A stretch of 64,000 nt of DNA from Ascidiella aspersa (GCA_963924565.1 OZ004609.1:5208001-5272000), one strand, 5' to 3'. Counted from the stretch's first letter, positions 17,687 through 43,587 are shown. Notes: generated from the letters alone by a model not told the origin. A program made the numbers and translations.

Positions 17687-17721
<35 letters not shown>

Positions 17722-23662: not shown

Positions 23663-23710
23663 ATTGAAAGAGAGTAAGGGGAAGGCGTAAGTTTGAAATA
23701 ATATAACGAT

Positions 23711-25675: not shown

Positions 25676-25932
25676 AGTACAAAAGTCAGTGGTCTCCACT
25701 AGATGGAGCTAGAGAGGCCAAAAAAATGCCGGGAGCTTCGCTGGAAAACGAAGACCGGGAGGGCGAAAAATAGACTAAGTACAGCGGGGCGAGAAAAAGG
25801 CGATGCGCAAAAACAACAAAGTACAAAGTCAGTGATCTCCACTAGATGGAGCTAAAGAGGCCAAAAAAATGCCGGGAGCTTCGCTACAAAAAGAAAAACG
25901 GGAAGGCGAAAAATACTCTAAGTACAGCGGGG
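25676..25932. repeat. Direct duplication of about 115 bp (period about 143) in the E4 5' UTR
   Basis: AGTACAAA(A)GTCAGTG..CCACTAGATGGAGCTA..GCCGGGAGCTTCGCT..CTAAGTACAGCGGGG occurs twice. Confidence 0.85.
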
Positions 25933-26422
25933 GAGTCCCTGTGACGTCACCCGGCGCACTTAGGTACGAAAAAGCTAACACTAATACACTAATAATACAC
26001 ACACAGGGTAGCCACTAGAGGGCTCCAAAGGGTTAGACGATAACGTTATTTGACCAAGTTAAAACACTTGGAGGTACACGAGTTAATAGGCGCAAAAGGT
26101 TACAATGAGGTGGCACTATGCAGTCAAACTACACGTTAGGAGGCGCTCTTTCGCTTAGGGCGAAGAGTACGATTTACAGCGATTTACAACAAGAGATAAG
26201 AGTAGTAAACACAAAGGCCCTACAACAGCCTGCCTGCCGCCCCTGTAACTGTTTGTTACAGCGGCTGCTGACTAATACCTTCTAGCAAGGTCTGACACAG
26301 AGAAACGCACAAGAACCTCTAACAGGTCGATAATACAAGAGAGAAAAAACGTCACAAGGTATATCCAAAAGGTTGAAAGGCTCGCAGTTGCGGGTGATTC
26401 TACGAAAATAAGATAAAGTCCG

Positions 26423-27000
26423 GGTGGAACAAGTTACCTTATTCAAATAGAATACTTTAAAATCGCGCGGCTAAGGCTTTATGCGAAGGCCAACTTTCAA
26501 AAACGCCAGTTTACTCAATATACGATTGTATGACTTCACCACCTATATAAGGGTGTCGCCAGAGAGGCGCTGGTAAGTATTCACCATGCTATGTGGTCAC
26601 GTGGTACTTCGCGTTGTTCGAAATTTCTTGTCGCGCCCCGTTCGTTTCAACCGCGACATTTTTAACAAAAAATTAACGCTCAAAAAGCCAACTCAACATT
26701 GATCCCAATGCATATCGCGCGCTGTGGCACTTCAAAGGGCGGCCTACACGCAAGAGAGAAGCGCCCTACGGTAAGTTGGAGGAAGCGTCACCTGCGAAAG
26801 CCACGGGGGTCGGGCAGACTTGCAAAGGAGAGAGAGAAGCTGATTTTGGTTATGGGAGAGTGGGCCAGGGCTATACATGCATTTTCGCCATCTCTTAATT
26901 TGACAAAGGACGCGATTACGCGATTTGGGGATTTTGCTACATGAATGCAATACAGTGGGGGTAGCTTGGATAAGCGATTGATTGGTTCTAAAAAATATTC
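26423..27000 (-). repeat. SL RNA gene repeat unit (1 copy); SL exon 26438-26453 fused to E4
   Basis: 584-bp unit sequence; donor GTAACT. Confidence 0.95.
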
Positions 27001-27663
27001 TTTTTTTTATCTTTTTTATTGGTAAGAAAAGAAATGAAAATACAGCGAAACAGGTTAAAAGTCCAACGTAAAGTGGAGAAACGAAAAGTAATAAAATGGC
27101 ATTGCGCTAAACGACGATGGGACAGGGCGATACGATCATAGTTACAGGCGAGAAATTGCGATTTTAGTAGGTAAGCGATAAGTTAACTAATTGAGCGATA
27201 TTCCATGGTTATACATTGACTAGAACATGAACATATAAGATTTTCAATCGTTACGGTTGCGATACATAAGTGAATGTGAAGGTGTGTGTAGGCAGGTTTA
27301 CTGCTCGAAAGGATGTGGATGGGGTTGCGAATACATTTACAGTTGTGAAGGTAGTGTGTAGGTAGCGTTATTGCTACGCACGAGCACACACAAGCGGAAG
27401 TGGGGACAGTTGTATTAATTTTTATACGGGTTGCATGGGAGTGAAGGTAGTATGTATATTGCGATGCTGCGCTCGAGCATACGCGGAAATACGAGAAGGG
27501 ATATTATTAATTTGCATTTTGATAATGCAGTCAGAGTGGTTCTGCTTTGGCCTTATTCATGGAGTATTGCAATTTGGGATAAGGCAATTTTTGTTTACTG
27601 TTGTTGCGAGATATGAGACTAATATATTAATGAAATAACATTTTATAGCGGAGAAATTTTGAT

Positions 27664-27735
27664 GGTTGCTCCGGGGTTCGAACCCGTGCCCTTAGGATTG
27701 CAGAGCTGGCGTTTTAACCATTAGGCCATTCGGTC
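27664..27735 (-). promoter_or_regulatory. tRNA-derived Pol III promoter in E5 3' UTR
   Basis: A box TGGCCTAATGG; B box GGTTCGAACCC at tRNA spacing. Confidence 0.75.
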
Positions 27736-27833
27736 GGCTAGTCTGTGGTCAGTATTTGGCGAAGTTATTTGTGCGTGGTAGTTGAGTGCGTCTCGTTGCT
27801 GCTTATTTTGCTTAGGGCTGTGATTTGATGTTT

Positions 27834-30800
27834 TTACTCGGGATTGTTCTCTGTGTTGGTTTGTGTTTGGATATCGTTTAAAATAGTTTTAAATTTAACT
27901 TTTATTTTCCAAGTTGTTTCGTTCACGAATTCTTGTGGGTTGTGCAGGTATTCGTTTTCTGTTGTAAGTTTGTTTTTTTCGGTTATTAGTATTTGCTTTG
28001 TGAGAACTAGTAATTTTTGTTTGCTCAGACTGTGTTGAAATTCTGTTGGGTTTTGATTGTATAGGATGGCGTAGTGGTCTGGGGTAAAAGTAAAGCCGTG
28101 TTCATGGGTTGCTATTTGATTGAGGTTTGTATATATTTTTTTTGTTATGTTGCATTGGTATAGAAGGTGTTTTATATTGTCGTTGGGCCCGTGGCAGTAG
28201 TTGCATCTGTTTATTCTAATTTTTCCTGTTGAGGTTCTGATTATGTTACGTGATTTTCGGAAGTCGCCCCATTTATATGCTTGGTGGGCCGTGAGGTAAG
28301 ATGTTTGCCGTTCTGTATTATTAAATATTTTTTTTTGTTTCGATTTAATAAGGTGTATATCTTTCCAGTTTATAATTTCGTTTTCCATTTTGATTTCGGT
28401 ATGTATTGTTTTCTTTTGGACCAGGATGTCGTAGATGGCTCGCATTTTATTATTTATCCAATCAAATTCGTTGTGTGTTTCATATATTATATTGTAGTGT
28501 TTGACGATAAATTGCCATTGTGAATTAATTTGCTGTTGTTTGGGGTAGTGATTGCCGAATAAGTGCGGGATGATGAGTTTTCCTTTAGTGCCCATTTGGT
28601 ACATGTACCAACTTTGATAGGGTTGGGTGGGCTCGATGGTGTTTTTCATTTGTGATATTTTTTCCAATTGAGCCGCAGCGATTTTAGTTTCGAGGTCTGG
28701 CATATGGATTCCACCGTTTTGTTTCGTATTTATGAGTTTAAGCCGCTTGATGGGTTCAATTTTTTTTGGGTGCCACAGGAATTCGTACAGTAATTTGTTT
28801 ATTTCTTTTATTATTTTTTTTGTCGGTATGATAATACGTGCGATATGGATTATTTGTGAGATCATTAGAGCATTTATCATGTGTATTTTCCCGTAAATTG
28901 TTTGGTTGAGTTTATTGAATTTGTGTTGTATGGCTTGAATTTTGTTTTTCGCTTTTATCCAGTTAATATTTATTAGTGAGTATTGAGTGTTGTAATGTAT
29001 GCCTAGAATTTTAACTTGTTCTTTAATGTGTTGTGGGTATAATTCTAAAAGTTGTGTTTTTATGAAGGGTGTAAAGGTAATAATTTGAGTTTTGTCCATG
29101 TTAAGTTTTTGTCCTGTTATCTTTTGGTAGTTTTTGAGTTCCTTGAAGAGTTCCAGCGCACTGTTTTTGTCCGAGATATAGAATGTGTTGTCGTCCGCAA
29201 ATTGTTGTATGACGATTTTTGTTTTGAATAGTTTAAATCCTGTTATTTTTTTGTTCCTTTTTATCATTTTGTTTAAGATTTCTCCTATACAGGTGTATAG
29301 CAGCATACTAAGGGGACATCCTTGGCGGAGGCCTCTTTTTATGGTGATTTTTTCAGTTAGTTCGCCGTTCACTTCCAGTTGGCTGTTTATGTCCGTGTAT
29401 AAGATTTCGATCCATTTGATGAGATTTTGGTTGATTCCGAAGGATGTGAGGGTTTTTATTATTAGTGCGTGGTCTACTCGGTCAAAAGCTTTCTCGAAGT
29501 CTGTGAGTACGATTGCCAGTTCCTCCGATTTTGCTTTTGCGTACTCTATGACTGAAGTGGTATTGTAATGGATATGTTCGATACGTCTGTCTTCTATGCC
29601 GCATTTCTGATCTATGTTTATTTTATCTTTTAATTTCTTTTTTAGCTTGTTTGTAATGATTTTGCTGAGAATTTTGTATTCCGTTGTTAAAACCGAAATC
29701 GGGCGCCAATTTTTAATTTCGTTTAGAGGTCCTTTTTTTGGTAGTAGTTTGGTTATTGCAGTTTTCATCGTTTGCGTTAGATTTCCTTGTAGTTGTATAT
29801 TTATAAAAAGCTCTTGTAGATCTTCCTTTAGTTGATGCCAAAAGTGTTGATAAAATTCCGAAGTCAGTCCGTCGATTCCCGGGGTCGTGATTTTGTTTAA
29901 ATCTTTCATTGCTTTTGTTAGGTCGGTTAGTGGAAAAAATTTATCTTCTATTTTTTCTGTATTTGAGGTTTGTTCCGTTTTGAGTATTTCGTTTTGTCCG
30001 TTTATGTTTAGGCTGTCTTTTTTTCCCCATAAGTTGTAGTAGAATTTGTGTATTTCTATTTTGATTTCCGCGTTGGTTTGTATTAGATTTCCTTTCTCGT
30101 CTTTAATTTTATCTATTTTTTGTTTTTCGCCGTTTTGTTTTTCTAGTTGATAAAAGTGTCTGTCTGGTGTTTCATTTTCTGCTAGGTTTTTGATTCTGGA
30201 TCGTATTTTCGCTCCCGCTGTGCGTTTTCTTTCCATTTCTTTCAGTTTTTCTATAATTGATATGTATTGTTCGTTATGGGTTGTGTTTCTGCTATTCATT
30301 TTTGCATGTATTGATTTTAGTTTGTTTCTGAGTTCATTTTCTTCGATGTTTTCTGTGCGTTTTTTTTCGATGCAGTAAGTTATGGTTTCTTTTTTGATTT
30401 TCTTTTTGAGGTGTTCCCACCACGCTAGTAGGTGTGGGTGTTCGTCTTTTTTTGTTTTTTCGTGTTCTATGGTTTGTTTTATTGCGTTTGTGTATTTTTC
30501 GTCTTTCAAGATATCATTGTTTAGTTTCCAGTGTCCGTTTATAATTTTTTTTTTGTTAATTTTACCAATTGTTATGAATGGTGCTTGAGTGTGATCTGAT
30601 ATTACATGTGGGATGTGTCCTGTTTGGTAGATTTTATTTGTGTTGTTGTCTTTGTTGTATATTCTGTCTATTCGTGTTGCTATTGTTGGGGTTACGCGTG
30701 TGTAGACTTTAGTATTGGGGTAGCGTTGCCTGAAGGTATCTTGTAAGCAGAATTGTGTTTTTGCTTGTCGCCATTGTTTTCGGTCTTTTGTGTTGTGTGT

Positions 30801-31334
30801 ATTTGTATTTGTAGAGTCGCTATCGTGTTCTGTGAAGTTGAAGTCCCCCATTAGAATGAGGTCGTCATAATGGTTTGCGTTTTGGTTTAGATATTTTTCT
30901 ATCTCATGGATTTGGTTGGTTCTTTGTTTTATTTGTGCATTTGCTTGGCCAGATTTTAGGTAGATATTCAGGAGTCTTGTTTTCTTATGGTTCTTGATTT
31001 CGTTTTTGTGTGTTAGTGTAATTTCTTGTATCCAGTTTTGTAGTATTATGTTTTGTTCAATGTCCCAGTTTGAATTGATTTCTTCCTTATATAATACGAG
31101 TGTGCCTTGCCAGAAATGTTTTACATTTTCGTTTGTGTTAATGTTTAGTACGTATTTAAGTTTTTCCTTTTCGGCCCAATTTTTAAGACTGTTTTCGTTT
31201 ATTTTGTGGGTTTCTTGCATAAGGCAGATATCGATTTCGTTTTGTTTGATGAATGTTCCTAGTTGGTGTAATTTGTTGTGTATTCCGTTAATGTTTAGTG
31301 TGCATATCTTTAATGTTGTTTTGGTGTGTGACAT
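27834..31334 (-). CDS. E5 ORF2: APE endonuclease-RT
   Basis: Complete EN, RT and CCHC motifs; ATG at 31334 (MSHTK). Confidence 0.97.
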   Translation of the reverse strand: MSHTKTTLKICTLNINGIHNKLHQLGTFIKQNEIDICLMQETHKINENSLKNWAEKEKLKYVLNINTNENVKHFWQGTLVLYKEEINSNWDIEQNIILQNWIQEITLTHKNEIKNHKKTRLLNIYLKSGQANAQIKQRTNQIHEIEKYLNQNANHYDDLILMGDFNFTEHDSDSTNTNTHNTKDRKQWRQAKTQFCLQDTFRQRYPNTKVYTRVTPTIATRIDRIYNKDNNTNKIYQTGHIPHVISDHTQAPFITIGKINKKKIINGHWKLNNDILKDEKYTNAIKQTIEHEKTKKDEHPHLLAWWEHLKKKIKKETITYCIEKKRTENIEENELRNKLKSIHAKMNSRNTTHNEQYISIIEKLKEMERKRTAGAKIRSRIKNLAENETPDRHFYQLEKQNGEKQKIDKIKDEKGNLIQTNAEIKIEIHKFYYNLWGKKDSLNINGQNEILKTEQTSNTEKIEDKFFPLTDLTKAMKDLNKITTPGIDGLTSEFYQHFWHQLKEDLQELFINIQLQGNLTQTMKTAITKLLPKKGPLNEIKNWRPISVLTTEYKILSKIITNKLKKKLKDKINIDQKCGIEDRRIEHIHYNTTSVIEYAKAKSEELAIVLTDFEKAFDRVDHALIIKTLTSFGINQNLIKWIEILYTDINSQLEVNGELTEKITIKRGLRQGCPLSMLLYTCIGEILNKMIKRNKKITGFKLFKTKIVIQQFADDNTFYISDKNSALELFKELKNYQKITGQKLNMDKTQIITFTPFIKTQLLELYPQHIKEQVKILGIHYNTQYSLININWIKAKNKIQAIQHKFNKLNQTIYGKIHMINALMISQIIHIARIIIPTKKIIKEINKLLYEFLWHPKKIEPIKRLKLINTKQNGGIHMPDLETKIAAAQLEKISQMKNTIEPTQPYQSWYMYQMGTKGKLIIPHLFGNHYPKQQQINSQWQFIVKHYNIIYETHNEFDWINNKMRAIYDILVQKKTIHTEIKMENEIINWKDIHLIKSKQKKIFNNTERQTSYLTAHQAYKWGDFRKSRNIIRTSTGKIRINRCNYCHGPNDNIKHLLYQCNITKKIYTNLNQIATHEHGFTFTPDHYAILYNQNPTEFQHSLSKQKLLVLTKQILITEKNKLTTENEYLHNPQEFVNETTWKIKVKFKTILNDIQTQTNTENNPE

Positions 31335-31389
31335 AATGTTCAAGAAAGGGGGGGAAGACGCAAAGATTTAAAAGTACGATTTATATATA

Positions 31390-33162
31390 TTAACCAATGG
31401 TGGCGTTTACTTGGACTATTATACCGGATGAGTTAACACTAATTTCGGGTGGTGTGTTCTGTATATTTCTTCGTTTGTTTTCTTCATCGTCGGTGGATAG
31501 TTGTCGTTTTCTTTCGTTATCCAGGGGTGTTGAGTGCTGTATGGGGTTTGGGTTATTTGGTGTCGGTAATTCATCTTCTTTGGATTCTTCTTGGTTGGCT
31601 TCTTTTTTTGGCGGTTTTTTTCTTCTGTGTTTTGGTCTTTTTCTTGTTTTTTTTGGATGGTAGTTTTCGTCATCAGAAGGTTCCGTGTTGGTTGTATTGG
31701 AGTTTGGAAAAGGATTGAGGAAGACAGACGAGTAGTCGTCGCTAGAAAGAGGGGGTGAGGAAGAGGAGGAGGAGGAGTGGGAGAGGGAGGAGGAGGGAGG
31801 GTTGTAGTCGTTGTCATGGTCGTCTGGTATCGATGCTATGGTTGAGGGAACGGAGTCAGGTGGGTCGGATAGGTTTGGCGGTCCTAGGTAGGGTGATTCG
31901 ATTTTTTCAATTGGAGATGTATTTTGTACGGGGATATTTGGGGTGGATGGTTTGCTGTTTTGGTCTGGTTGGTTTCTTGCTTCTTTGTTGGTATGGTTAG
32001 ATCCTGGGCTCATTGGCTTGTTATTTAGGTGGTTTGCGGAAGTTGACGGGGTGTTTTCTTGTATGTCTTGGGGTGCCGGTAGATTGGTTCGTTGCGGGTT
32101 TTCGTTTATGTTTTCTGTGTCCATTTTTTCATTTCCGTTTTCGTTATCAGGGATTAGATTTTCTGCTATCTCGATAATTTCATCTTTCTTGTGTAGCTCT
32201 TTTTCTTTGCTGTGGGAATGATTTGTTGCGTTGGATTCGTTGCTTTGGTTTAAGGTGTGATTCGGGGTTGCCATGAATCCTTGGTTGAAGATTTCCTGTT
32301 TTCTTAGTCTTTCTTCTAACTGTTTGATTACGGCTTCCAAGGAGGCCGTATTTTTTGGGTCGAAACGGTTTGCTGGTGTTGACGTTCTGAAACCTTGCAA
32401 TTTTGGGAATTCTCTGTCAAAGATTTGGTCGTGTGTCTCGCTGGGTGGTTTGTTATGGAGGAGATCGCGGTCAAATTCTGGTGTTATAATTGGTTCGTTG
32501 GGGCAGTCTTTCATCAGGTGTCCTGTTTTAAAACAAAGGCGGCATGTTTGGGGGTTGGGACATTGGCTAGCCCAATGTCCCCTCTCGTTGCAATTTCTGC
32601 ATACCGGTCCGAATGATTGGCCTGGTTTCACGATTTGTATCCTGTTTTTCTTGTAGAATATTTCCGGCTGGATGTTTTCAAGTTTAGGATCTACTAAGAA
32701 TAGATTAACGTAGCCATTCATCTTGTCTTGTCTAGATTTGTGAGTGCAAAATTGAGTACCTTTAGGTTTTCCCCATTGTAATTCAGACGCTATTTTAAAG
32801 ATATGATCTTGTGTCCATTCAAACGGGATCGGGAATAGGGTAATTTTGGTTTGGGGGAGGGTGGGTTCGAAAGATTTCAATTCTATTATTTGTCTATCTG
32901 ATGTTCGGATTTCTTTACCGTTTTCTAGTTCTTTGTGAAGTCTATCTCGGTTATATTGAAGGCGTGGATTTTCCTTATTAAATGTTATTTGGTAGGTTTG
33001 GTTCTTTCTGTTGAGTGTCCTTGCTCCTGTGATATTTTCATCATATTTTTTCAGTGCTTGTTCCTCATCGAATAATGATAGGAAGTTTATTATCGTAAAG
33101 TTCGATGTGTTACGAACTTGAATGTTTAGTGAACGTGTAGCATTATATTCTAATATATTCAT
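31390..33162 (-). CDS. E5 ORF1 (family A), 590 aa
   Basis: Two CCHC knuckles; ATG at 33162. Confidence 0.92.
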   Translation of the reverse strand: MNILEYNATRSLNIQVRNTSNFTIINFLSLFDEEQALKKYDENITGARTLNRKNQTYQITFNKENPRLQYNRDRLHKELENGKEIRTSDRQIIELKSFEPTLPQTKITLFPIPFEWTQDHIFKIASELQWGKPKGTQFCTHKSRQDKMNGYVNLFLVDPKLENIQPEIFYKKNRIQIVKPGQSFGPVCRNCNERGHWASQCPNPQTCRLCFKTGHLMKDCPNEPIITPEFDRDLLHNKPPSETHDQIFDREFPKLQGFRTSTPANRFDPKNTASLEAVIKQLEERLRKQEIFNQGFMATPNHTLNQSNESNATNHSHSKEKELHKKDEIIEIAENLIPDNENGNEKMDTENINENPQRTNLPAPQDIQENTPSTSANHLNNKPMSPGSNHTNKEARNQPDQNSKPSTPNIPVQNTSPIEKIESPYLGPPNLSDPPDSVPSTIASIPDDHDNDYNPPSSSLSHSSSSSSSPPLSSDDYSSVFLNPFPNSNTTNTEPSDDENYHPKKTRKRPKHRRKKPPKKEANQEESKEDELPTPNNPNPIQHSTPLDNERKRQLSTDDEENKRRNIQNTPPEISVNSSGIIVQVNATIG

Positions 33163-34203
33163 ACTTGTTTGTAGGGGAAAGGCGCAAAGGGAAGAAAGAT
33201 ACGGAGGGAATAGTGCGATACAAGAAAGGATACAAACAAACAATGTGGTGAGTGTGTTTTTATTTTATTTTTTTTATTTACCGCTAGACGGCGCTAGAGA
33301 GCAGTGGATTTTTTTGGGGTTCGCCACAAACTGTTTATTTTTTATTAACCGCTAGACGGCGTGGTGTGTGTTTTTTTGATTTGTCGGTAGATGGCGCTAG
33401 TGTGGCAAATATTTGATCAGGGCTTCGCCTCAAACGCTTAAAGGGTGGGGCGAAAAAACGACAGAGTACGAATACGATGACAGGCGGTAACAAGACAGTT
33501 AAGCTCCGCTGCAAGTTTTGGGATGTCAGGAAAAAAACAAACAAAAAGTACGAGCCAATTAGTGACGTCACTTCCGACGTCGAGGGATGAAAAATTTACA
33601 AGTATTAGAAAAGGTAGTACCACTAAGGGGCAGTAGAGATCTCGAAAATTTGCCGGGAGCTTCGCTGTATTTTTAAATACGAGTAGGCGGAAAAAGTTCT
33701 AAGTCCGTCAAGAGAGTCTCTGAGACTTCTCTCGGCGTACTTAGAAGCGCAAAAAACCACAAACACGACAAAAAATTAATAACGAGGCGAAAGAGGAGGC
33801 ACCACTAATTGGCGCACTACTAGAACGTAGTTTACCCAAGTTGAAACACTTGGCGAGAAAGATTACAAAGGCGCAAAAAATCTACAATACGATCAATAAC
33901 AAACACACAAATAAAATTAGATAGCGGTCTTTTGCTTAGAGCAAAGAGTCGGTTTTAGCACGATTAAGTACCACAAATAGTAGAAAAGTAACAACAGGTC
34001 CCTACAAAAGCCTGCCTGCCGCCCCTGCAACTGTTTGTTACAGCGGCTGCTGACTAATGCCTTCTAGTAAGGCCTGACACGAAAAGCGCAACAAAAAAAC
34101 CTCTAATAGGTTGAAATTACAAAAGAGTACGTCACAAGGGTATATCCAAAAGGTTGAAAGGCTCGCAGTTGCGGGTGATTCTACGCAAATAAGATAAAGT
34201 CCG

Positions 34204-35370
34204 GGTGGAACAAGTTACCTTATTCAAATAGAATACTTTAAAATCGCGCGGCTAAGGCTTTATGCGAAGGCCAACTTTCAAAAACGCCAGTTTACTCAAT
34301 ATACGATTGTATGACTTCACCACCTATATAAGGGTGTCGCCAGAGAGGCGCTGGTAAGTATTCACCATGCTATGTGGTCACGTGGTACTTCGCGTTGTTC
34401 GAAATTTCTTGTCGCGCCCCGTTCGTTTCAACCGCGACATTTTTAACAAAAAATTAACGCTCAAAAAGCCAACTCAACATTGATCCCAATGCATATCGCG
34501 CGCTGTGGCACTTCAAAGGGCGGCCTACACGCAAGAGAGAAGCGCCCTACGGTAAGTTGGAGGAAGCGTCACCTGCGAAAGCCACGGGGGTCGGGCAGAC
34601 TTGCAAAGGAGAGAGAGAAGCTGATTTTGGTTATGGGAGAGTGGGCCAGGGCTATACATGCATTTTCGCCATCTCTTAATTTGACAAAGGACGCGATTAC
34701 GCGATTTGGGGATTTTGCTACATGAATGCAATACAGTGGGGGTAGCTTGGCTAAGCGATTGATTGGTTCTAAAAAATATTCCACCGTGGTGGAGCAACTT
34801 ACCTTATTCAAATAGAATACTTTAAAATCGCGCGGCTAAGGCTTTATGCGAAGGCCAACTTTCAAAAACGCCAGTTTACTCAATATACGATTGTATGACT
34901 TCACCACCTATATAAGGGTGTCGCCAGAGAGGCGCTGGTAAGTATTCACCATGCTATGTGGTCACGTGGTACTTCGCGTTGTTCGAAATTTCTTGTCGCG
35001 CCCCGTTCGTTTCAACCGCGACATTTTTAACAAAAAATTAACGCTCAAAAAGCCAACTCAACATTGATCCCAATGCATATCGCGCGCTGTGCCACTTCAA
35101 AGGGCGGCCTACACGCAAGAGAGAAGCGCCCTACGGTAAGTTGGAGGAAGCGTCACCTGCGAAAGCCACGGGGGTCGGGCAGACTTGCAAAGGAGAGAGA
35201 GGAGCTGATTTTGGTTATGGGAGAGTGGGCCAGGGCTATACATGCATTTTCGCCATCTCTTAATTTGACAAAGGACGCGATTACGCGATTTGGGGATTTT
35301 GCTACATGAATGCAATACAGTGGGGGTAGCTTGGCTAAGCGATTGATTGGTTCTAAAAAATATTCCACCG
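34204..35370 (-). repeat. SL RNA gene tandem repeat, 2 x 584 bp
   Basis: SL exons at 34219-34234 (fused to E5) and 34803-34818 (intact). Confidence 0.95.
34769..34818 (-). ncRNA. Intact spliced-leader RNA gene
   Basis: ATTCTATTTGAATAAG|GTAAGTTGCTCCACCACGGTGGAATATTTTTTAG: Ciona-type SL exon, GT donor, TCCAC/GTGGA hairpin, Sm-like A-U6-AG; 3' end approximate. Confidence 0.9.
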
Positions 35371-35982
35371 TTTTTTTTCTCTCTCTATGGGTTTATTTAC
35401 ATTAAACAAACGATAAACAAAGGCAATATAACAAAAACGAAAAATAAGAAAAACCAAAACAAACGAAAGAATAATTTTTTATATAGTAGTTATGATAGAA
35501 ATATGCTTCGATTTTGGAGCCGGTATATATGCAGGCTATTTAATTGGGAGTCTTTTTTAAGGTAGTTTGGACTTCGCGCGGTTTTAATGTGCTGTGTTAC
35601 TTGTTGGGGAATTGGCTATTTTTGGAGATGGCATTTTATATTTTATACTAATAGCTAGGTTTTGGACTTATGTTTGTAATTGCGTTTTATATATATGTGT
35701 CGATGTTTCGCTCTTAGTTATAGGACTATGTTTTTAAGGGAATTTTATGTTTTTAAGGACTATGTTTTTAAGGGAATTTTACACGGTTGGGTGATTTGCA
35801 GTGGTATGCAGGTTGAGTTCTTATATTTATATGGACAACCATTGTTTTATATGCTACTACATCACGGTTGGGTGGTTAGCGGTATGTACGTTGATATGTT
35901 ATATGTATACTATCAGGTAATGCTTTATGTGCCACTGCACTTTGAACTATTTTAGTTCAAGTTGTTGTGAAAAGTTGAGATT

Positions 35983-36054
35983 TTCGTCGGCGGGGTTTGA
36001 ACCCGCGGTCTCAGGACTTGATACCCGGTGACTTAGCCACTCGGCTATTCAGTT
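35983..36054 (-). promoter_or_regulatory. tRNA-derived Pol III promoter in E6 3' UTR
   Basis: A box TAGCCGAGTGG; B box GGTTCAAACCC; T-arm GCGGG/CCCGC; TTTT shortly downstream. Confidence 0.75.
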
Positions 36055-37222
36055 ATTGTGAGGAGGCGGTGAAAAGAGCGTATACGAATGACTAGTTTTG
36101 AGTTAAGGGGCTGTTTAGGCTGGGCTAGCTGGAAGTCATCCGCGGTTTGCGGATAGACATTTGCGTAGGTTGCAAGGGGGGCGAAGAAAATAAAAGGCGA
36201 GGAAAACAAATGTTTTAATAAGTAATATAACATAAGGAAATTAAATCTATCTCTTGCCAAACCGACAAGGGACGGCAAAACATTAAGTAATGGTTAGGTA
36301 TTCATCCGCATTTGGCGGAGGCTTAATATGCGAATTAAAGCAATAAATGGCTTTTAATAAACAGGATAGGTACAAAAAGGCACAGAATATATATAAAAAA
36401 GCAATGTAGAATTAAGTCTGCCTCTTGCCTAACCGGCAAGGGGCGGCAAATGACTTTAGGAAATAAGTAAATAAGATATTTATTAAGTCACGTGGTTTAG
36501 CCTCATGTGCTTATTCACAAAGGAGGTTTAGGCAGTGAAATTTTTAGGCTAGGTTTTTGGATGGTTGTGTATATTAGTAAAGGGTTATGACTTATAGAGC
36601 GGTTTATGGTAAGAAGATTATGATAAGTATTATCCAGTAGAGACGGTGACGTCACATTGTTTATACACATTACAGTCACTAGGCAACAGCCAGCTGTGTT
36701 TTGTTATTGTTATTGTTTTGGTTATATCAGCTGACCATTGCCTAGTGACGGCGGTTACATTTCAGGGAAAAAGAAGAACATAGGAAGTAAGCATGTGAAA
36801 TAATAATAGCAGATGTAACAAAAAGAAAAGAGTATGGTTTAAAAGTTGTCAAATAATTTTTAAAAGTGGATTATTTCACCCAAGACTTATTTCTATGGAT
36901 TATTATGTGGATCAAGAGTTTTAAGCAAAATTTAGAGGTATGTTAAATTAAAATTCATTGTTTTAACGAAATATACATTTGTTATATAATCACAAAGCAA
37001 TTTAAAATATAGTTTTTAACAAGAAGAAAAAATTTTTTTGATAGGAATTGGGACAAAGGTCAAGTTTCGGACTCTCTGGTTATCGAGTAGAGGCTGATCA
37101 TTAAGATACAGGTATTAATATATTATGGTTATTATTATTTTTTTGAAAATTTAGCAATTGCAGTGTTAATAGTAAATGAAGTAACAGTAGAAATAATTAT
37201 TTAATCGACAAAGATATACATA

Positions 37223-40200
37223 TTAAAATATTATAAGATTTTCGCTGCCGCTGTTAAGTTCCGAAGAAGTGTCAAGGTTGTAGAACTTGACCAGTCGCTC
37301 TGGTGACAAAATGCTCGCGAAGGATTTAAATTTGGTTCTGATTTTCCAGTATGTTTTATTGATAAATTTCGTTTGATCCCATATATAATCGTTTTCGAGA
37401 TCTTGTTTTTGTTTTGCTTTAATTAGGGTAGTTTTAAAAATATTTGCTAGTTTTATTATAAAAGGGTGAGTGTTACCTTGGGCTGGGCAGTTGTATTGTA
37501 GAATGGACGTGGATAGTTCTTCAGTACAGCCTCTGTCCTCGAGGATGAATGCCTCGAGTCTTCGGGCCAATTGTTTAACTACTGGACAATGCTCTATCAT
37601 ATGTGTTATGGTGTCTTCCTCATCTCTGCAAAGCTTGCAGTGCAGTTTGAATACCCTGCCCGTTTCGTTTTGGAAAATTTGGCGGTTCATTTTGAACTTA
37701 CCCCAAAAATAGCCTTTTTGTGCTATCCGATAATTGATTTCCCGTTCCGAATTGGTGTGAAAATATTTAACGTTATTGTTCTTTAAGAGAATGGTATTCC
37801 AACTGCATTGCGAGTCCTGCAGAGGGAGGGTGGTTGGAATATATTTATTTTTAACTATTTCTTTATATAGATGCTTTTGTTTTGCTGTTTCCCAGTCAAA
37901 GCTGTTTGCAGTTTGGCTGTTGATGATGTTATGATTATATATTTTGTTGATCCATTCTGGCCTTGTTTGTAAATTTTTTGGATAAGATTGGTTATATAAT
38001 TTGGGGTTTATTGATTTAGCTTTGAATCCAAGATGGTATCTGACCCATGAGTGCCAGAAGTCGGAGATGGTGTCCAAATTTTTATAATCTTTGAGCTGCT
38101 CGAGTTGAGCAGCTTCTATTTTAGCTCCGACATCTGGCACCCATAGGCCGCCTTCTTTTACCGGTGCGATTATTTTTTTCCTCGCTACGGGTTCCATGGA
38201 GAGTGGAAACCACAAAAAGCCAAAAATGAGGGTTTGAAATTGTTTAATGTATTTTTGCCTCATCGTTAGAATTCTAGCTGTAAAGATAATTTGGGACATG
38301 ATGAGGGCTTGTATCAAGTTTATTTTACCAAAGACCGAAAGGTTTCTATATTTGTGAATTTGGATTATGTTTTTAATTTTATCAATTTTTTTTGGCCAGT
38401 TTAGCTTTTCGTGGTCTCCACTCTCCCCGTAGCAGATTCCCAGTATTTTACATTCGGTTTTTACATATTCTGGGTATACAGTGGTAACTCTATGTTTCAG
38501 GTCCTTGTTAAAAGCAATTATTTCCGTTTTTTCGACGTTGAGTTTTTGTCCGCTTATTGTTTCATATTGTTTCAAGTTTAATAAAATTTGATTAATCGAT
38601 TCTACGTTGGTGGTAAAAAAAGTGCAGTCGTCTGCATACTGTTCCAGTTTGATTTCAGTTTTTCCAAATTTTGGTCCATTGATTTTAGGGTTGTTTTTTA
38701 TTATGTGGGCTAGTACGTCGGCACTGGCTATAAAGAGTAGCATCGACAGGGAGCATCCCTGTCGTATGCCTCTTTTGATTTGAATTTCGTTGCCAAGTTT
38801 CCCGTTGATAAGTATTTGGCTGGTGATATTTTTGTATATGATTTTTATCCAGTTTATCAGGTAGTTGGGTATGCCGTACTTCTCCAAGACCCTGATCGCG
38901 AAGCCAATGTCGACGCGGTCAAAGGCCTTGGAGAAGTCGGTGAGAACTAAAGCAAGCGGTTGTGTGTGTGATTTAGCATATTGTGATGCGGCTTTAATGT
39001 TATAGTGTATGTGTTGTATTGATCTGTTTTTTAGGCCGCATTTTTGATTTAGTGAGATTTTTTGATCTAGGTGTTGTGTAAGTCTGTTTGTGAGTGTTTT
39101 AGTGATAATTTTGTAATCTGTGTTGAGAAGAGAGATTGGTCTCCAGTTTTTTATTTGATTTTTATCTCCTTTTTTTGGTATTAATTTAACGACGGCCTTT
39201 CTCATGGACTTTGGCATTACATTTTGTAGGTAAATATTATTCACTAATTCTGTCAAGTCCAGTTTTAGTTGGGGCCAAAAGGTTATATAGAATTCTACCG
39301 GTAGGCCGTCGCAACCTGGAGACGAACCTCTGTTCATTTTGTTTATTGCTTGCTTTAGTTCTCGGGTGGTTATAAATAGTTGAGTTTTTGATGTGGGGGA
39401 TGTTCTAATTGTTTTCAGGATTTTCTTTTGTTTTTTACGTTTTACTGTGGGGTTTTGTCCCCACAGTTCGTCGTAAAAGGTGTGGATTATGGTTTCAATT
39501 TTTTGTGGGTTTGTTGTTGGGTTTTGATTTATCGGGTCGGTTAATTTGTGGATGCCGGTGTTGGTATTTCGGGTTTTCTCTTTTAAATAGAATTGGGTAT
39601 TAGGTATTTCGTCATTTTCAAAGTTTATGATTTTGGCTCGTTTTTTGGCTCCTTCCAGGATATTGTTTTCGTAGTCTTTGATTTTTTGTTTTGTTTCTAG
39701 GTATGTTTTGTTTGTTTGTAATTGCTGAGGGTCTATTTTTTCCATTAATGATTTTAAAGTTTGGGCGTATACTCGTTGTTGTTTTTCTTGTTGTTTTTTA
39801 AAATTGATGGAGAATGTTTTGGATTTTTTCCGAATTGATGATTTAAGATCTTCCCACCAATTTGATATGTGATGGTAGTCACATTTTTTTGTTTGCCAAT
39901 GCGCCAAATGTTCCCTTATTAAAGTTTTGTATTCCTCATTCTCCATCAATTGACAGTTCAATTTCCATATGCCTTTTCCCCATTTGGTCTGGGAGTTAAG
40001 TTTGATTTTAATAAAAGGGGATTGGGAATGGTCCGAAAAGGCATATGGAAAGTGCCCTGCTTGGTTGATCCAGGATGACAGGCTCTTGGTGTGGTAGATC
40101 CTGTCAATCCTGGATGCGGCTTTCCGTGCTATATACGTGTATGTTTTTTTGTGGGGGTAGAATAGTCGAAAGGAGTCAACTAAATCAAGTTGACTCCTCT

Positions 40201-40813
40201 CGACTATCCACCTCCTGGTTGCGATGTTTTGCCGTTGCCTGGTTGCGGTGTTGTCCTTGGGGTATTCAGTAAAATTGAAATCACCAAGGACGATATGGTT
40301 ATGACTATATTTATGGTTATGGCTATGTTTACGGTTATGGTTATGATTATGTTTATGGGGCTGCTTGATATCGTCTAGGACGGTGTCAAGCATCTCAAAG
40401 CGGGTTTTGACTTTTATTGAGCCTTCCCCAGACGGCAGATATAGATTATATATATTTATTTGTTCGTTTTCTTGTTTGTCGTCTGGGGACCATTCTATTG
40501 TTATTTGTTGGATTCTATCCGGGATGATTATTTTATGTTTTATACTATGTTTATTTAATTTGTCGAGGAAGGAGCCGTTGACTAAAAAAGCCGTGCCGGC
40601 GAAATTTAGATTAGAGTTAGTAGTGTTAGGATAGAAGATTATATTATGTTTATTTAGGATTGCATTAAATTTGGTAATATTAAAGTTATGAGTTTCCTGT
40701 ATACCCAGAATATGTATATTGTTTAGATTTACAAATGATAGAACACTGTCCAGTTTCTTACTTAATGAATTTACGTTGACAGAGGCTATCCTGATTTCGC
40801 CATCCACGTCCAT
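37223..40813 (-). CDS. E6 ORF2: APE endonuclease-RT, 1196 aa
   Basis: NVNS, QETH, GDFNF, RIDR, SDH; PGCDG, NWRPIS, DFSKAFDRV, QGCSLS, YADD; CKLC...H....C. Confidence 0.97.
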   Translation of the reverse strand: MDVDGEIRIASVNVNSLSKKLDSVLSFVNLNNIHILGIQETHNFNITKFNAILNKHNIIFYPNTTNSNLNFAGTAFLVNGSFLDKLNKHSIKHKIIIPDRIQQITIEWSPDDKQENEQINIYNLYLPSGEGSIKVKTRFEMLDTVLDDIKQPHKHNHNHNRKHSHNHKYSHNHIVLGDFNFTEYPKDNTATRQRQNIATRRWIVERSQLDLVDSFRLFYPHKKTYTYIARKAASRIDRIYHTKSLSSWINQAGHFPYAFSDHSQSPFIKIKLNSQTKWGKGIWKLNCQLMENEEYKTLIREHLAHWQTKKCDYHHISNWWEDLKSSIRKKSKTFSINFKKQQEKQQRVYAQTLKSLMEKIDPQQLQTNKTYLETKQKIKDYENNILEGAKKRAKIINFENDEIPNTQFYLKEKTRNTNTGIHKLTDPINQNPTTNPQKIETIIHTFYDELWGQNPTVKRKKQKKILKTIRTSPTSKTQLFITTRELKQAINKMNRGSSPGCDGLPVEFYITFWPQLKLDLTELVNNIYLQNVMPKSMRKAVVKLIPKKGDKNQIKNWRPISLLNTDYKIITKTLTNRLTQHLDQKISLNQKCGLKNRSIQHIHYNIKAASQYAKSHTQPLALVLTDFSKAFDRVDIGFAIRVLEKYGIPNYLINWIKIIYKNITSQILINGKLGNEIQIKRGIRQGCSLSMLLFIASADVLAHIIKNNPKINGPKFGKTEIKLEQYADDCTFFTTNVESINQILLNLKQYETISGQKLNVEKTEIIAFNKDLKHRVTTVYPEYVKTECKILGICYGESGDHEKLNWPKKIDKIKNIIQIHKYRNLSVFGKINLIQALIMSQIIFTARILTMRQKYIKQFQTLIFGFLWFPLSMEPVARKKIIAPVKEGGLWVPDVGAKIEAAQLEQLKDYKNLDTISDFWHSWVRYHLGFKAKSINPKLYNQSYPKNLQTRPEWINKIYNHNIINSQTANSFDWETAKQKHLYKEIVKNKYIPTTLPLQDSQCSWNTILLKNNNVKYFHTNSEREINYRIAQKGYFWGKFKMNRQIFQNETGRVFKLHCKLCRDEEDTITHMIEHCPVVKQLARRLEAFILEDRGCTEELSTSILQYNCPAQGNTHPFIIKLANIFKTTLIKAKQKQDLENDYIWDQTKFINKTYWKIRTKFKSFASILSPERLVKFYNLDTSSELNSGSENLIIF

Positions 40814-41000
40814 TCCGTCCGGTGAGAGGGATCACTGTGGAGAAAATGAGTATGATGAGCGACTGGCCAAGGAGGAAGAATTATACATGAAATAAAAACT
40901 ACGATTACGGTTATGATTATAATTACAGTTACGTTTACGATTATGATATGCTTTGTTATGGAATTGGTGTTCGTGTGAATGTGTGTGATGCCTAGCTTGG

Positions 41001-42329
41001 TCAGCATCCTTTCTTTTTCTTTCTGTTTTTTCTTTTTTGGCGTTGGGGTGGGGTTCCGTCGGTTGGGGTGTCGGTGGTGCTGAGTGTTCTTTTGTTACTG
41101 CTAGGGTCATGGCCTTCAGATTCAGTGCTTTCAGATTCGTCGGAGCTGGGAGCTTCTTGCTGGAATTTGGAGATTAGATTTGAAACTAGTGTTGGGCTTG
41201 GGATTATGATCCGCGGGGATTGGACATCAGTGGACGACAGGGGGTGGTGGGTGGGGGTGTGATAGGTGGAGTTAACGGATTGATTTTGTATGATTGCATG
41301 GGAGGTTGAAGGGCGTTGGGGTCGGGGAGGTGGGGAGTTTTGGGCAGGGGGTGGAGGTGGGGGAGAGAGGGTGCTGCGGGAAGGGGACAGGTGATTGGGT
41401 TGCGAGGTGTGTAGCTGGTCTGGTTTGGGTTCATCAGGTTTGTTTGCTTGGTTGTGGTTGTTTTCGTTGTCGGAATTGCTGGATTGGTTTTCATCGATTA
41501 CGAGGTTAGAGTTGTTGTTGTCGGATAGGTCAGAGGGTACGTCATCTTGCCTTAGGCTTTCAGAGGATTGGTTAGGATTTTTATTTGGTTTGTTTGCTGC
41601 ATTTTGGTTTGTAATAGCTGGGAATTCTTCATTGTATTTTTCTTGGTTGGTGATTTCTTCTGGATTTTTGTTGGTTGTCGCAGAGGGTGATGTACCCTCT
41701 TGGCTTTTGTTTGGTTGGTTTGCGTTATTTTTTTGTGGACACTGGTTAGACCAGTGTCCCCTTTGGCGGCAGAATCGGCAGTTCGGGCCGAATGATTCGC
41801 CTGGTTTTATCACCTGTATGCGGTTTTGAAAGATTGAAATTTCAGTTGGGATATTTGAGATTATTGGTTCTTCTAGGCTGAGGTTGACGTAACCGTTTCG
41901 GATTTCTGGGTGGTTTCTGTGAGATAACCATTGGTGATTTTTATATTTTCCCCAGCTTAGCTTGCTGGGGAGGGCTTCTAATCGGTCGTCTGGTAGTTCA
42001 AATGGGACGGGGAAGAGGGTTATACGGTATAGGGGTTTGGAGGGGGTAAAGGATTGGAGGAGGATTTGGGTGCCGTCCACCTCAATCCTCTCCCCGCGGA
42101 TGTATTTTTCGTGTAGTTGGTTTCTAATGTGTTGTTGCTGGTTTTTGAAAGTAATTGTAAAGATTTTTTTTTCCCTGTTCAGAGTTCGAATGCCAATAAT
42201 TGATGTTTTATAGTGGTGCAGTGGTTGACGTTCTTGGATTAAATTGAAAAAGTTTTCTAGGGTGAATGGTCCGGTGGTCGAGATTTGAATGTTGATCGTA
42301 TGATCCTGGCATAGCGTAGAGGTCGCCAT
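41001..42329 (-). CDS. E6 ORF1 (family C), single CCHC knuckle, 442 aa
   Basis: CRFCRQRGHWSNQC; ATG at 42329 (MATSTL). Confidence 0.92.
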   Translation of the reverse strand: MATSTLCQDHTINIQISTTGPFTLENFFNLIQERQPLHHYKTSIIGIRTLNREKKIFTITFKNQQQHIRNQLHEKYIRGERIEVDGTQILLQSFTPSKPLYRITLFPVPFELPDDRLEALPSKLSWGKYKNHQWLSHRNHPEIRNGYVNLSLEEPIISNIPTEISIFQNRIQVIKPGESFGPNCRFCRQRGHWSNQCPQKNNANQPNKSQEGTSPSATTNKNPEEITNQEKYNEEFPAITNQNAANKPNKNPNQSSESLRQDDVPSDLSDNNNSNLVIDENQSSNSDNENNHNQANKPDEPKPDQLHTSQPNHLSPSRSTLSPPPPPPAQNSPPPRPQRPSTSHAIIQNQSVNSTYHTPTHHPLSSTDVQSPRIIIPSPTLVSNLISKFQQEAPSSDESESTESEGHDPSSNKRTLSTTDTPTDGTPPQRQKRKNRKKKKGC

Positions 42330-43587
42330 GCTGACCAAGCTAGAGTTGTTTTTATTTTATTTATGTGTTTTGCAGTGTTGATTTTCGCTTTTTTGTTATG
42401 AATAAAATTGCACGGATATATGGTTTTGAATTATTGATATAAAAGTATATAAAAGTATGTATGGGCAAAGATATAGTTGTATAAAAGTATATAAATAGAT
42501 TAGCTTATGATGTATAAATATATGATCTGACACAAAATGGCGGATTAAATGGTGTTAACAGTAGGTTTTAGGCGGGAAAACGGGGACAAATTTAGGACAC
42601 AAAATGGCGGCAAATAAATTTTTATGTTTAAATTTGAAGAGCCTGGCAGCCCTGCCGTCGGCGGGAGCTAGAGGGACTGCTGTCAATCAAGCCGACTACG
42701 TCGGCAAGACTGACAGGAGCCCACGCAGTAGCCGCACGCCCAACAAACGGGAGGCCAGTCTATTCTTGCTAAGTTTTTACTGTTATATTACTAATGGTTG
42801 TTGACTTTCAAACACAAAAAACACCTGCAAAACTGCACACAACCTGAACACAAGGCTGCTGCAGCCGAACTAAACTTGTAAGCTCCACAAATAATAAAAA
42901 ATAAATGGAAAAAATTGAAAAAAGATGGAAAAAATGGAAAAAACGGAAAAAAAAAAAAAAAAACGCAAAAAAGCAGCGGGCAGCGGGATTCCCTTTGAAT
43001 CGGGTAGTTGCTGGGTCCAACGAGTGGAGCAATTTACCTTATTCAAATAGAATACTTTAAAATCGCGCGGCTAAGGCTTTATGCGAAGGCCAACTTTCAA
43101 AAACGCCAGTTTACTCAATATACGATTGTATGACTTCACCACCTATATAAGGGTGTCGCCAGAGAGGCGCTGGTAAGTATTCACCATGCTATGTGGTCAC
43201 GTGGTACTTCGCGTTGTTCGAAATTTCTTGTCGCGCCCCGTTCGTTTCAACCGCGACATTTTTAACAAAAAATTAACGCTCAAAAAGCCAACTCAACATT
43301 GATCCCAATGCATATCGCGCGCTGTGCCACTTCAAAGGGCGGCCTACACGCAAGAGAGAAGCGCCCTACGGTAAGTTGGAGGAAGCGTCACCTGCGAAAG
43401 CCACGGGGGTCGGGCAGACTTGCAAAGGAGAGAGAGGAGCTGATTTTGGTTATGGGAGAGTGGGCCAGGGCTATACATGCATTTTCGCCATCTCTTAATT
43501 TGACAAAGGACGCGATTACGCGATTTGGGGATTTTGCTACATGAATGCAATACAGTGGGGGTAGCTTGGCTAAGCGATTGATTGGTT

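What the first reader, a model, noticed from the sequence alone, without database searches (positions are those of the whole stretch)
34178..34234. Families A and B have a different anti-SL arm, a possibly convergent solution
Seen: ATTCTATTTGAATAAG-GTAA-CTTGTTCCACCCGGACT-TTAT-CTTATTTGCGTAGAAT. The arm CTTATT-TGCG-TAGAAT pairs 15 of 16 SL exon nt, three of them by G-U. TTAT pairs the GTAA donor and GTTC/GGAC closes an inner stem. It recurs at 18644-18700, 26397-26453 (B variant TTCG) and 60825-60881. The mismatches differ from those in the family C arm, and the G-U pairs work only on the sense strand, which points to RNA-level selection.
Basis: partly seen in the sequence, partly recalled or inferred. 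Interest (0 to 1): 0.85.

Follow-up and report, generated by a model that had tools for sequence, protein, structure and literature searches.

The report
Hairpin hiding a hijacked spliced leader
Jumping genes living inside a sea squirt's spliced-leader RNA genes start their RNA with the host's leader exon and splice site, then fold an element-encoded arm over them, probably to stop the splicing machinery beheading the RNA.

Summary
Nt 1-57 form a hairpin in which the 16-nt Ciona-type SL exon pairs at 15 of 16 positions (3 G-U) with an arm, and GUAA pairs with UUAU (-16.6 kcal/mol, z -4.4).

It is the 5' end of a 7.2-kb L1-group LINE (APE+RT ORF2, CCHC ORF1). The LINE sits in the intron hairpin of tandem 584-bp SL RNA genes. 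Off-array copies begin exactly at SL nt 1, so exon, donor and arm all belong to the RNA template.

Nt 36-95 differ at 1 of 60 positions between A and B, which are 68% identical overall. Only the sense strand of A/B folds well.

Family C (37% ORF2 identity) is the sister lineage. It inserts 5 nt away and has a different arm, and its variation falls only in loops.

Related elements in two other ascidian hosts (metagenome contigs) carry arms matching their own host's intron. The +5 G of the donor is lost in 17 of 18 elements here.

Best reading: RNA-level neutralisation of the inherited splice donor. Convergence is not supported; common descent is more parsimonious but unproven. RNA-seq was uninformative.

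The scan had already noted the family C arm and the two insertion registers on this window.

The parts
34178..34234 (-). The finding: 5'-terminal hairpin of a family A element (SL exon nt 1-16, donor GUAA 17-20, inner stem 24-27/33-36, UUAU 38-41, anti-SL arm 42-57)
   Evidence: MFE -16.6, z -4.4; donor GU pairing probability 1.00 in a 300-nt context
60825..60881 (-). Identical family A hairpin
26397..26453 (-). Family B hairpin; G49U turns the U9-G49 pair into U/U
   Evidence: -16.0, z -4.05
18644..18700 (-). A-type hairpin whose leader carries the canonical G21 and C25 (probably target-derived); its ORF2 is broken
34140..34177 (-). Block just after the hairpin (nt 58-95); columns 61-90 are invariant in all 8 A/B copies; holds a small stem CGC-AACU-GCG and CCUUUUGG
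27001..34234 (-). Full family A element (7.2 kb): 5' UTR about 1.07 kb, ORF1 31390-33243 (CCHC), ORF2 27834-31343 (APE+RT), 3' UTR, A-tail
26990..27008 (-). 3' junction of family A: A-rich tail followed by the SL gene resuming at g38, just before the U-run
19248..26453 (-). Family B element (ORF2 73% identical to A)
11364..18700 (-). A-type element with fragmented ORF2
53642..60881 (-). Second family A element
34235..34818 (-). Uninterrupted canonical 584-bp SL RNA gene unit (SL RNA about 34771-34818; its 3' part is the promoter for the element at 34234)
   Evidence: (no hairpin: -8.7, z -0.4)
42988..43053 (-). Family C hairpin (comparison): exon, donor and intron nt 22-25 paired with a different arm
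   Evidence: (-19.2, z -3.4)
53029..53094 (-). Family C2 hairpin variant; all its differences from C1 lie at unpaired positions
35371..43053 (-). Family C element; at its 3' junction the SL gene resumes at c33

Best explanation
The 57-nt feature is the 5' end of a site-specific L1-group LINE that lives inside the tandem spliced-leader (SL) RNA genes of an ascidian.

Shown: the element sits in the small hairpin of the SL RNA intron, just upstream of the U-rich Sm-like site. The gene is kept up to nt 31-35 and resumes at g38. The element's RNA template starts at SL nt 1, so it begins with a complete SL exon and a 5' splice site.

Shown: the next element-encoded nucleotides fold back on exon and donor as a 20-bp helix with a 4-bp inner stem. 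This fold is conserved and works on the sense strand.

Inferred: the hairpin acts on the RNA to keep the inherited exon and donor away from the splicing machinery. Trans-splicing, or cis-splicing to any downstream acceptor, would cut the leader off the 7-kb RNA. Loss of the +5 G of the donor would be a second device to the same end.
For: Anatomy:
- 12 SL sites share an identical upstream promoter. Five are canonical and seven run into two-ORF elements.
- ORF2 has APE and RT domains and ORF1 has CCHC knuckles. The closest solved protein is human L1 ORF2p (E 5e-72).
- All 17 3' junctions found in 264 kb are precise.

The leader is in the RNA: off-array copies L010 and L011 lack the promoter and start exactly at SL nt 1.

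Structure:
- z = -4.0 to -4.4 for A/B, against -0.4 for the canonical gene.
- Sense -16.6 versus antisense -8.8 kcal/mol.
- Donor GU pairing probability is 1.00 in a 300-nt context.

Constraint:
- A and B differ at 1 of 60 positions in nt 36-95, against 32% overall (P 3e-9).
- Three of four arm variants keep pairing.
- In sister family C, all 7-10 variant events fall at unpaired positions (P 1e-3 to 7e-5).

Generality:
- Relatives D (L058) and E (L055), from other ascidian hosts, sit at the same kind of site.
- Their arms are complementary to their own host's intron.
- The D stem shows one compensatory U-A to C-G change.

Donor:
- +5 is G in 188 of 189 canonical genes and non-G in 17 of 18 elements, with three different substitutions.
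- The C arm still keeps the partner of the lost G.
- D and E keep the +5 G but bury +5/+6 in a stem (probability 0.88-1.0).
Against: - No functional data. RNA-seq gave only 6 reads, so neither the transcription start, nor persistence of unspliced RNA, nor absence of splicing is shown directly.
- In D and E the GU itself is largely unpaired, so full masking of the donor is not universal.
- From my own knowledge, the donor is base-paired in stem-loop I of nematode and trypanosome SL RNAs, which still splice. Pairing alone need not block use.
- The insertion already separates the donor from the Sm-like site, which may suffice to inactivate it as a trans-splice donor.
- Elements are mosaic, so part of the A/B conservation could reflect recombination or array homogenisation.
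- The +5 site is unpaired in both hairpins and hence the least constrained.
Confidence: 0.5

Rival explanations
1. The hairpin is a selected RNA structure, but its role is not splicing. It could define or protect the 5' end (stability, a cap-proximal structure that limits translation of the full-length RNA). It could be a recognition site for the element's own proteins. Or it could organise the host-derived leader for formation of the 5' junction at integration.
For: - The whole first ~95 nt, not only the arm, is nearly invariant, and the 1.07-kb 5' UTR has other conserved blocks.
- Nearly all array copies are full length at the 5' end: 18 full ends against 2 truncated. That fits a leader with a role in 5' junction formation, as proposed for co-transcribed R2 (PMC4494074).
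- In D and E the helix covers the intron, not the GU.
Against: - It does not explain the recurrent loss of the +5 G at the cost of a base pair.
- It does not explain why every lineage covers or alters positions +1 to +6.
- Off-array copies integrate with a precise nt-1 end without any target homology.
Confidence: 0.25
2. The arm is a functionless by-product. It would be an inverted duplication of the leader made once (for example by snap-back during cDNA or second-strand synthesis). It would then be carried along and kept similar by recency, recombination and array homogenisation.
For: - The reverse complements of the arms are 75-80% identical to the leader, as expected of old inverted duplications.
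- Elements are mosaic, and some copies are 100% identical segmental duplicates.
Against: - The hairpin persists in lineages with 73%, 37%, 29% and 22% ORF2 identity, while the flanking UTR is unalignable.
- Family C variants avoid stems.
- The D stem has a compensatory change.
- Arms match each host's own intron.
- In A/B, 3 of the 4 changes away from a perfect complement to the exon give G-U pairs, so only the sense strand still folds.
Confidence: 0.1
3. One reading: the A/B and C arms are independent (convergent) inventions of the same solution.
For: - No sequence similarity between the A/B and C 5' UTRs beyond the shared leader (P 0.28).
- Different helix geometry, different spacer, and insertion sites 5 nt apart.
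- Family E, an outgroup to A/B+C within the 100%-supported clade, has no exon arm at all (P 0.58). So exon pairing is not universal in the clade.
Against: - A/B and C are sisters in the same host and the same gene.
- The pairing constraint itself erases the signal of homology.
- C has both exon and intron pairing and could represent the ancestral state from which A/B is derived.
Confidence: 0.35

Closest known systems
SLACS / CZAR / CRE elements of trypanosomatid SL RNA genes
   Same: Site-specific non-LTR retrotransposons that live in tandem SL RNA genes and lie downstream of the host gene's promoter.
   Different: They insert between nt 11 and 12 of the SL exon (PMC5814959) and belong to the groups with a restriction-like endonuclease (PMC4640811). 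Here the endonuclease is APE-type and the insertion is in the intron. The element RNA therefore keeps an intact exon plus donor and carries a hairpin over them.
NeSL-1 of nematodes
   Same: An SL-gene-specific LINE in a metazoan.
   Different: It targets spliced-leader exons and has a restriction-like endonuclease (PMC4640811). No leader-masking arm is known to me.
Tx1-clade target-specific LINEs (e.g. Keno in U2 snRNA genes)
   Same: APE-type L1-group LINEs that target multicopy small-RNA genes (PMC4494074). They share the two-ORF layout, and ORF2 is closest to L1 ORF2p.
   Different: An SL RNA gene target in tunicates was not found in the papers searched. Placement in the Tx1 clade was not tested against reference sequences. 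No 5' anti-leader hairpin is described for these elements.
R2 co-transcription with 28S rRNA and its 5' HDV-like ribozyme
   Same: Both depend on the host gene's promoter, and both must deal with host sequence at the 5' end of the co-transcript (PMC4494074).
   Different: R2 cuts the host part off with a ribozyme. Here the host leader is kept from nt 1 and folded away. No ribozyme family was found.
HIV-1 major splice donor stem-loop (own knowledge, not checked here)
   Same: A retroelement 5' leader in which the splice donor sits in a hairpin, thought to balance spliced RNA against full-length RNA.
   Different: An unrelated element. Its donor is its own rather than a hijacked host spliced leader.
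Stem-loop I of nematode and trypanosome SL RNAs (own knowledge)
   Same: The SL exon pairs with sequence around its own donor.
   Different: That is a feature of functional SL RNAs. The canonical SL RNA of this host shows no such fold (z -0.4), and the arm here is supplied by the element.

Membership tests
L1-group (L1/Tx1-like) non-LTR retrotransposon | N-terminal APE-type endonuclease followed by a reverse transcriptase in ORF2 | tested here: met
   Pfam Exo_endo_phos 4e-14 and RVT_1 1e-32; human L1 ORF2p 5e-72 over residues 8-889
L1-group (L1/Tx1-like) non-LTR retrotransposon | Separate ORF1 encoding a nucleic-acid-binding protein, and an A-rich 3' tail | tested here: met
   ORF1 has CCHC knuckles; 3' ends carry A-tails of variable length
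L1-group (L1/Tx1-like) non-LTR retrotransposon | C-terminal zinc-binding motif after the RT (zf-RVT) | tested here: inconclusive
   18.1 bits, below the 27.5 cut-off, in family A; 29.4 bits, above the cut-off, in relative D
Tx1 clade specifically | Groups with reference Tx1/Keno sequences in an RT phylogeny | not tested
The tree holds only unnamed database relatives.
Site-specific LINE of SL RNA genes | Copies occupy one defined position of the target gene with precise junctions | tested here: met
   18 5' and 17 3' junctions in 264 kb. A/B always resume at g38 and C at c33. Rare off-target copies exist.
NeSL / CRE (known SL-specific LINEs) | Restriction-like endonuclease C-terminal to the RT; insertion within the SL exon | tested here: not met
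   The endonuclease is an N-terminal APE domain. Insertion is at intron nt 31-38.
Functional SL RNA gene | SL exon, GU donor, a short hairpin and the U-rich Sm-like site within about 50 nt | tested here: not met
   Element-bearing copies keep exon and donor. They lose the native hairpin and have the U-run displaced by about 7 kb.
Selected RNA secondary structure | Folds better than shuffles, is conserved, and variation preserves pairing or is compensated | tested here: met
   z -4.0 to -4.4. 1 difference in 60 nt between A and B. Loop-only variation in C. One compensatory pair in D. The 5' strand is host-fixed, so classical covariation within A/B itself cannot be tested.
5' self-cleaving ribozyme (R2/L1Tc type) | HDV-like ribozyme fold at the element's 5' end that removes upstream host RNA | tested here: not met
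   No Rfam family at gathering threshold in the window. Retrotransposed copies keep the host leader from nt 1.

The most novel reading that the evidence does not exclude
The hairpin could be a switch rather than a lock, making the element a LINE that carries its own spliced leader. When closed, the full-length RNA survives as the template for retrotransposition. When open, the element's own SL exon is cis-spliced onto acceptors upstream of its ORFs. The resulting mRNAs would be indistinguishable from normal SL-trans-spliced host mRNAs. This would be a retrovirus-like balance of spliced and unspliced RNA, built from a hijacked host SL gene.
Probability: 0.12. Interest if true: 0.85.

Novelty: new variant of a known kind. 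Interest (0 to 1): 0.62.

Why it matters
Site-specific LINEs that depend on a host gene's promoter must deal with the host RNA fused to their 5' end. R2 cuts that RNA off with a ribozyme, and the known SL-gene elements split the exon.

These ascidian elements appear to use a third solution. They keep the whole spliced leader and its splice donor, then neutralise them by folding an element-encoded arm over them and by changing the +5 G.

If confirmed, this would do three things:
- Add the chordate SL RNA gene to the list of LINE targets.
- Give a natural, multi-lineage example of splice-donor masking by RNA structure.
- Offer a simple system for asking which features make an SL RNA a trans-splice donor.

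It may also account for some of the many SL RNA 'pseudogenes' reported in Ciona genomes, although no Ciona genome was examined here.

Tried and rejected
- **Rfam, TRF, ARAGORN.** Rfam at gathering threshold found nothing in the window. TRF found nothing because the period exceeds 500. ARAGORN found no tRNA.
- **Arm as a diverged copy of canonical downstream sequence.** I considered that the A/B arm derives from the canonical gene's downstream sequence, since UAGAA there pairs with UUCUA. Rejected: no significant similarity (P 0.96).
- **Shared GAATC-CCGC motif.** The motif after the A/B and C arms looked like homology but is not significant (P 0.28).
- **RNA-seq.** One raw-read run of the same species label gave 6 reads from about 6% of the run. 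Two lie over the hairpin. There were no joints and no start pile-ups, so it is uninformative either way.
- **Rest of the array.** The census therefore covers 264 kb, with 800 N left untouched.
- **Papers not held.** Yeats et al. 2010 and Vandenberghe et al. 2001 are not in the library. What I recall of them is unverified.
- **Pol III transcription of the SL gene.** Considered and set aside by inference only. The family C 5' UTR has long T-runs right after the hairpin, which would terminate Pol III.
- **G-U enrichment as proof of RNA-level selection.** By hand calculation, 3 of 4 changes being pair-preserving has P of about 0.02-0.07 in A/B, and only 1 of 4 is pair-preserving in C. This is suggestive, not decisive.

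Full report
**1. What is at the coordinates**

It begins with ATTCTATTTGAATAAG, the 16-nt spliced leader of Ciona (PMC1488885, PMC7986045), followed by GTAA.

SL+GTAA occurs 12 times in the window, all on the minus strand, with 0 expected by chance. It occurs 365 times in the 308.6-Mb genome, nearly all in one array on contig C3.

An alignment of the 12 sites shows that the 100 nt upstream are identical in all of them. Five sites continue as a canonical SL RNA gene in a 584-bp unit: exon, GUAAGU, a short hairpin CCACCACGGUGG, then a U-run. Seven sites diverge about 30 nt into the gene and run into 7.1-7.9-kb elements.

This host is not C. intestinalis, whose SL RNA lies on a 264-bp repeat with Sm motif AGCUUUGG (PMC7986045).

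**2. What the elements are**

Each element has an ORF1 with CCHC knuckles and an ORF2 with an N-terminal APE-type endonuclease and a reverse transcriptase. The closest solved protein is human LINE-1 ORF2p (E 5e-72).

The 3' ends are A-tails of variable length, followed by the rest of the SL gene. In A/B the gene resumes at g38, and in C at c33. At the 5' side, A/B share the gene to c31 (or to g35 with one deletion) and C shares it to c30.

Two lineages therefore insert about 5 nt apart, inside the SL RNA's own hairpin and just before the U-run.

In 264 kb of contiguous array (window plus L024-L043) there are 189 canonical genes and 18 element 5' ends: 8 A/B and 10 C. There is no third arm type. 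There are 17 precise 3' junctions.

Copies are 67-100% identical and mosaic. Two pairs are 100% identical, so part of the copy number comes from duplication within the array. ORF2 is 73% identical between A and B and 37% between A and C.

**3. The leader is part of the RNA**

Copies outside the array (L010 on C7, L011 on C2) have unrelated DNA upstream and start exactly at SL nt 1. An old decayed copy on C5 (L009) also starts at nt 1.

The simplest reading is that transcription starts at the SL gene's +1, and that the SL exon, the donor and the arm are all reverse-transcribed. This is an inference from DNA. RNA-seq gave only 6 reads.

**4. The hairpin**

For A/B the fold pairs 15 of 16 exon nucleotides (three G-U pairs, one U/C mismatch). 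GUAA pairs with UUAU, and a 4-bp inner stem forms.

| RNA | MFE (kcal/mol) | z-score |
|---|---|---|
| A/B 5' end | -16.0 to -16.6 | -4.0 to -4.4 |
| Family C 5' end | -17.9 to -19.2 | -3.2 to -3.4 |
| Canonical SL RNA region | -8.7 | -0.4 |

The hairpin persists in 95-nt and 300-nt contexts. The donor GU has a pairing probability of 1.00 in A/B and 0.99-1.00 in C.

It does not hold for C, whose antisense folds as well or better.

**5. Evidence of constraint**

- The first ~95 nt are the most conserved part of A/B elements: 98-100% mean pairwise identity against 44-88% over the ORFs and 3' UTR.
- A and B differ at 1 of 60 positions in nt 36-95 but at 32% overall (P 3e-9). Recombination could contribute to this.
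- Of four arm variants seen genome-wide, three keep pairing (U-A to U-G, G-C to G-U, U-G to U-A) and one (B) loses a G-U pair.
- In family C, three hairpin alleles differ by 7-10 events in nt 31-69, and all fall at unpaired positions (P 1e-3 to 7e-5). These alleles sit on backbones that are 97-98% identical, so they are old modules that have been shuffled.

**6. Other hosts**

An exact-pattern scan of metagenome contigs returned 29 contigs. Many carry SL RNA genes with the same exon but different introns and promoters.

Two further element lineages were found at the equivalent site:

- **D:** L058 holds a complete 7.1-kb copy, with the gene kept to C31 and resuming at G35. ORF2 is 22% identical to A.
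- **E:** L055, with ORF2 29% identical to A over its full length.

Both lineages start with exon, donor and 10-15 nt of their host's intron. An element-encoded arm complementary to that host-specific intron follows: a 12-bp stem in D and a 9-bp stem in E. D additionally pairs SL nt 2-9 with the sequence just after the stem.

The D stem is 97% paired in register, against 25-50% when slid. It has one compensatory U-A to C-G change and two one-sided changes that keep pairing, from only 3 distinct sequences.

In a cross-test, each arm that uses the intron pairs best with its own host's leader:

| Arm | Own host's intron (kcal/mol) | Other hosts' introns |
|---|---|---|
| C | -11.0 | -6.1, -8.7 |
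| D | -18.9 | -9.4, -8.2 |
| E | -16.3 | -7.0, -6.8 |

The A/B arm is the extreme case. It pairs almost only with exon plus GUAA (-14.9 kcal/mol; 0 of 500 shuffles as good). E does not pair with the exon at all (P 0.58).

The common theme is an element-encoded arm that pairs with the host-derived leader. Which part of the leader is covered differs between lineages.

**7. The donor**

Position +5 of the donor is G in 188 of 189 canonical genes. It is C, A or U in 17 of 18 elements.

Within leader nt 1-30, three of the four substitution events hit this one site. By hand calculation, P is about 0.004.

The site is unpaired in both hairpins, so drift is a possible explanation. Two observations argue against drift:
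- The family C arm still carries the C that would pair with the lost G.
- In A/B, a G21 would pair with U37, as it does in copy 18700.

The change therefore cost a base pair in both lineages. D and E keep the +5 G but bury +5/+6 in their stem (probability 0.88-1.0).

Every lineage thus either alters or sequesters the +1 to +6 region.

**8. Mechanism**

Known SL-gene LINEs insert within the exon (SLACS/CZAR between nt 11 and 12, PMC5814959; NeSL in SL exons, PMC4640811). They therefore never carry an intact exon plus donor.

The ascidian elements insert in the intron, so their 7-kb co-transcript begins with a near-consensus 5' splice site. I infer that the hairpin and the +5 change protect the RNA from losing its leader. 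The threat would be trans-splicing, or cis-splicing to downstream acceptors.

| Claim | Confidence |
|---|---|
| It is a selected RNA structure | about 0.8 |
| It has this specific function | about 0.45-0.5 |

Caveats:
- Donor pairing does not stop natural SL RNAs of nematodes from splicing (own knowledge).
- The Sm-like site is already displaced by the insertion.
- In D and E the GU is not itself paired.

Rival explanations are a role in 5'-end protection, protein recognition or integration, and a functionless inverted duplication. The second is poorly compatible with sections 5 and 6.

**9. Convergent or inherited?**

On a quick ORF2 tree:
- A/B and C are sisters (SH-aLRT 96).
- They lie within a 100%-supported clade that also holds E and three database proteins of unknown context (P0001-P0003).
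- D lies further out.

Both arms look like decayed inverted copies of the leader (15/20 and 20/26 identity), but they share nothing beyond what pairing forces.

Common descent is more parsimonious (about 0.6) and convergence is not excluded (about 0.35).

**10. Novelty**

The papers I could search list U2 snRNA genes, microsatellites and transposons as Tx1-clade targets (PMC4494074). [quoted passage not shown] I found nothing on SL-gene LINEs in tunicates, nor on a leader-masking arm.

Repbase and Yeats et al. 2010 could not be consulted. That paper is cited for SL RNA pseudogenes being "rife" in Ciona. I therefore rate this a new variant of a known kind, not categorically new.

The scan had already noted the family C arm (s1-801588) and the two insertion registers (s1-802414) on this window.

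**Limits**

- 800 N in the fetched part were left as they are.

Noticed in passing
window 27665-27735 (-) and 35985-36050 (-): Both lineages (only 37% ORF2 identity) carry a tRNA-like stretch with a GGTTCGAACCC / GGTTCAAACCCC T-arm in the 3' UTR. ARAGORN calls no tRNA. Rfam tRNA scores 19 bits (E 0.14, below threshold) for the family C copy and finds nothing for A/B. It may be a conserved 3' UTR module.
   Followed up: partly
window 33995-34060 (-), element nt ~176-240: A second block of the A/B 5' UTR is 97-98% conserved. It can form a hairpin (GCCGC-UGUAAC ... GUUGCA-GGG-GCGGC), with a G/A variant opposite a U. The 5' UTR is about 1.07 kb long and has several such blocks.
   Followed up: no
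window 5190-5245 (-); L023: Head-to-tail junctions of family C elements. In the window, a C 3' end with its A-tail is followed directly by a 5'-truncated C that starts inside its own arm. In L023, the A-tail is followed by TGTTGGAC, the part of the C 5' end that resembles the canonical target CGGTGGA. So C seems able to insert into another C's retained pseudo-target.
   Followed up: partly
C3:5312803 and C3:5321045 (element 5' ends, 8,242 bp apart); likewise C3:5329922 and C3:5373942: Two pairs of elements are 100% identical over more than 7 kb. Part of the element copy number therefore comes from unequal crossing-over or segmental duplication within the SL array, not from new insertions.
   Followed up: no
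L045, L066, L070, L064, L059, L046, L061, L050, L053 (metagenome contigs): Other sequences begin with SL+GTAA followed by A, C or T at +5, then A-rich sequence and ORFs with CCHC knuckles. Some have dispersed, unrelated upstream DNA, and none shows a convincing 5' hairpin. They may be other retroelements carrying the leader, or retrocopies of trans-spliced RNAs. My search pattern selected for GTAA.
   Followed up: partly
L052, L054, L055, L056, L060, L063, L065, L068, L069, L071, L072: About seven different SL RNA gene types share the identical 16-nt exon and GTAAGT. They have different intron hairpins, U-runs and promoters. The Ciona-type SL therefore seems widely conserved among the organisms (probably ascidians) in these samples.
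   Followed up: no
window 34140-34177 (-): The block after the A/B hairpin, invariant over columns 61-90, contains ACCUUUUGGA. Family C has U6 and U8-17 runs at the same place. These resemble Sm-type U-rich sites, so the element RNA might partly mimic an SL RNA. This is untested.
   Followed up: no
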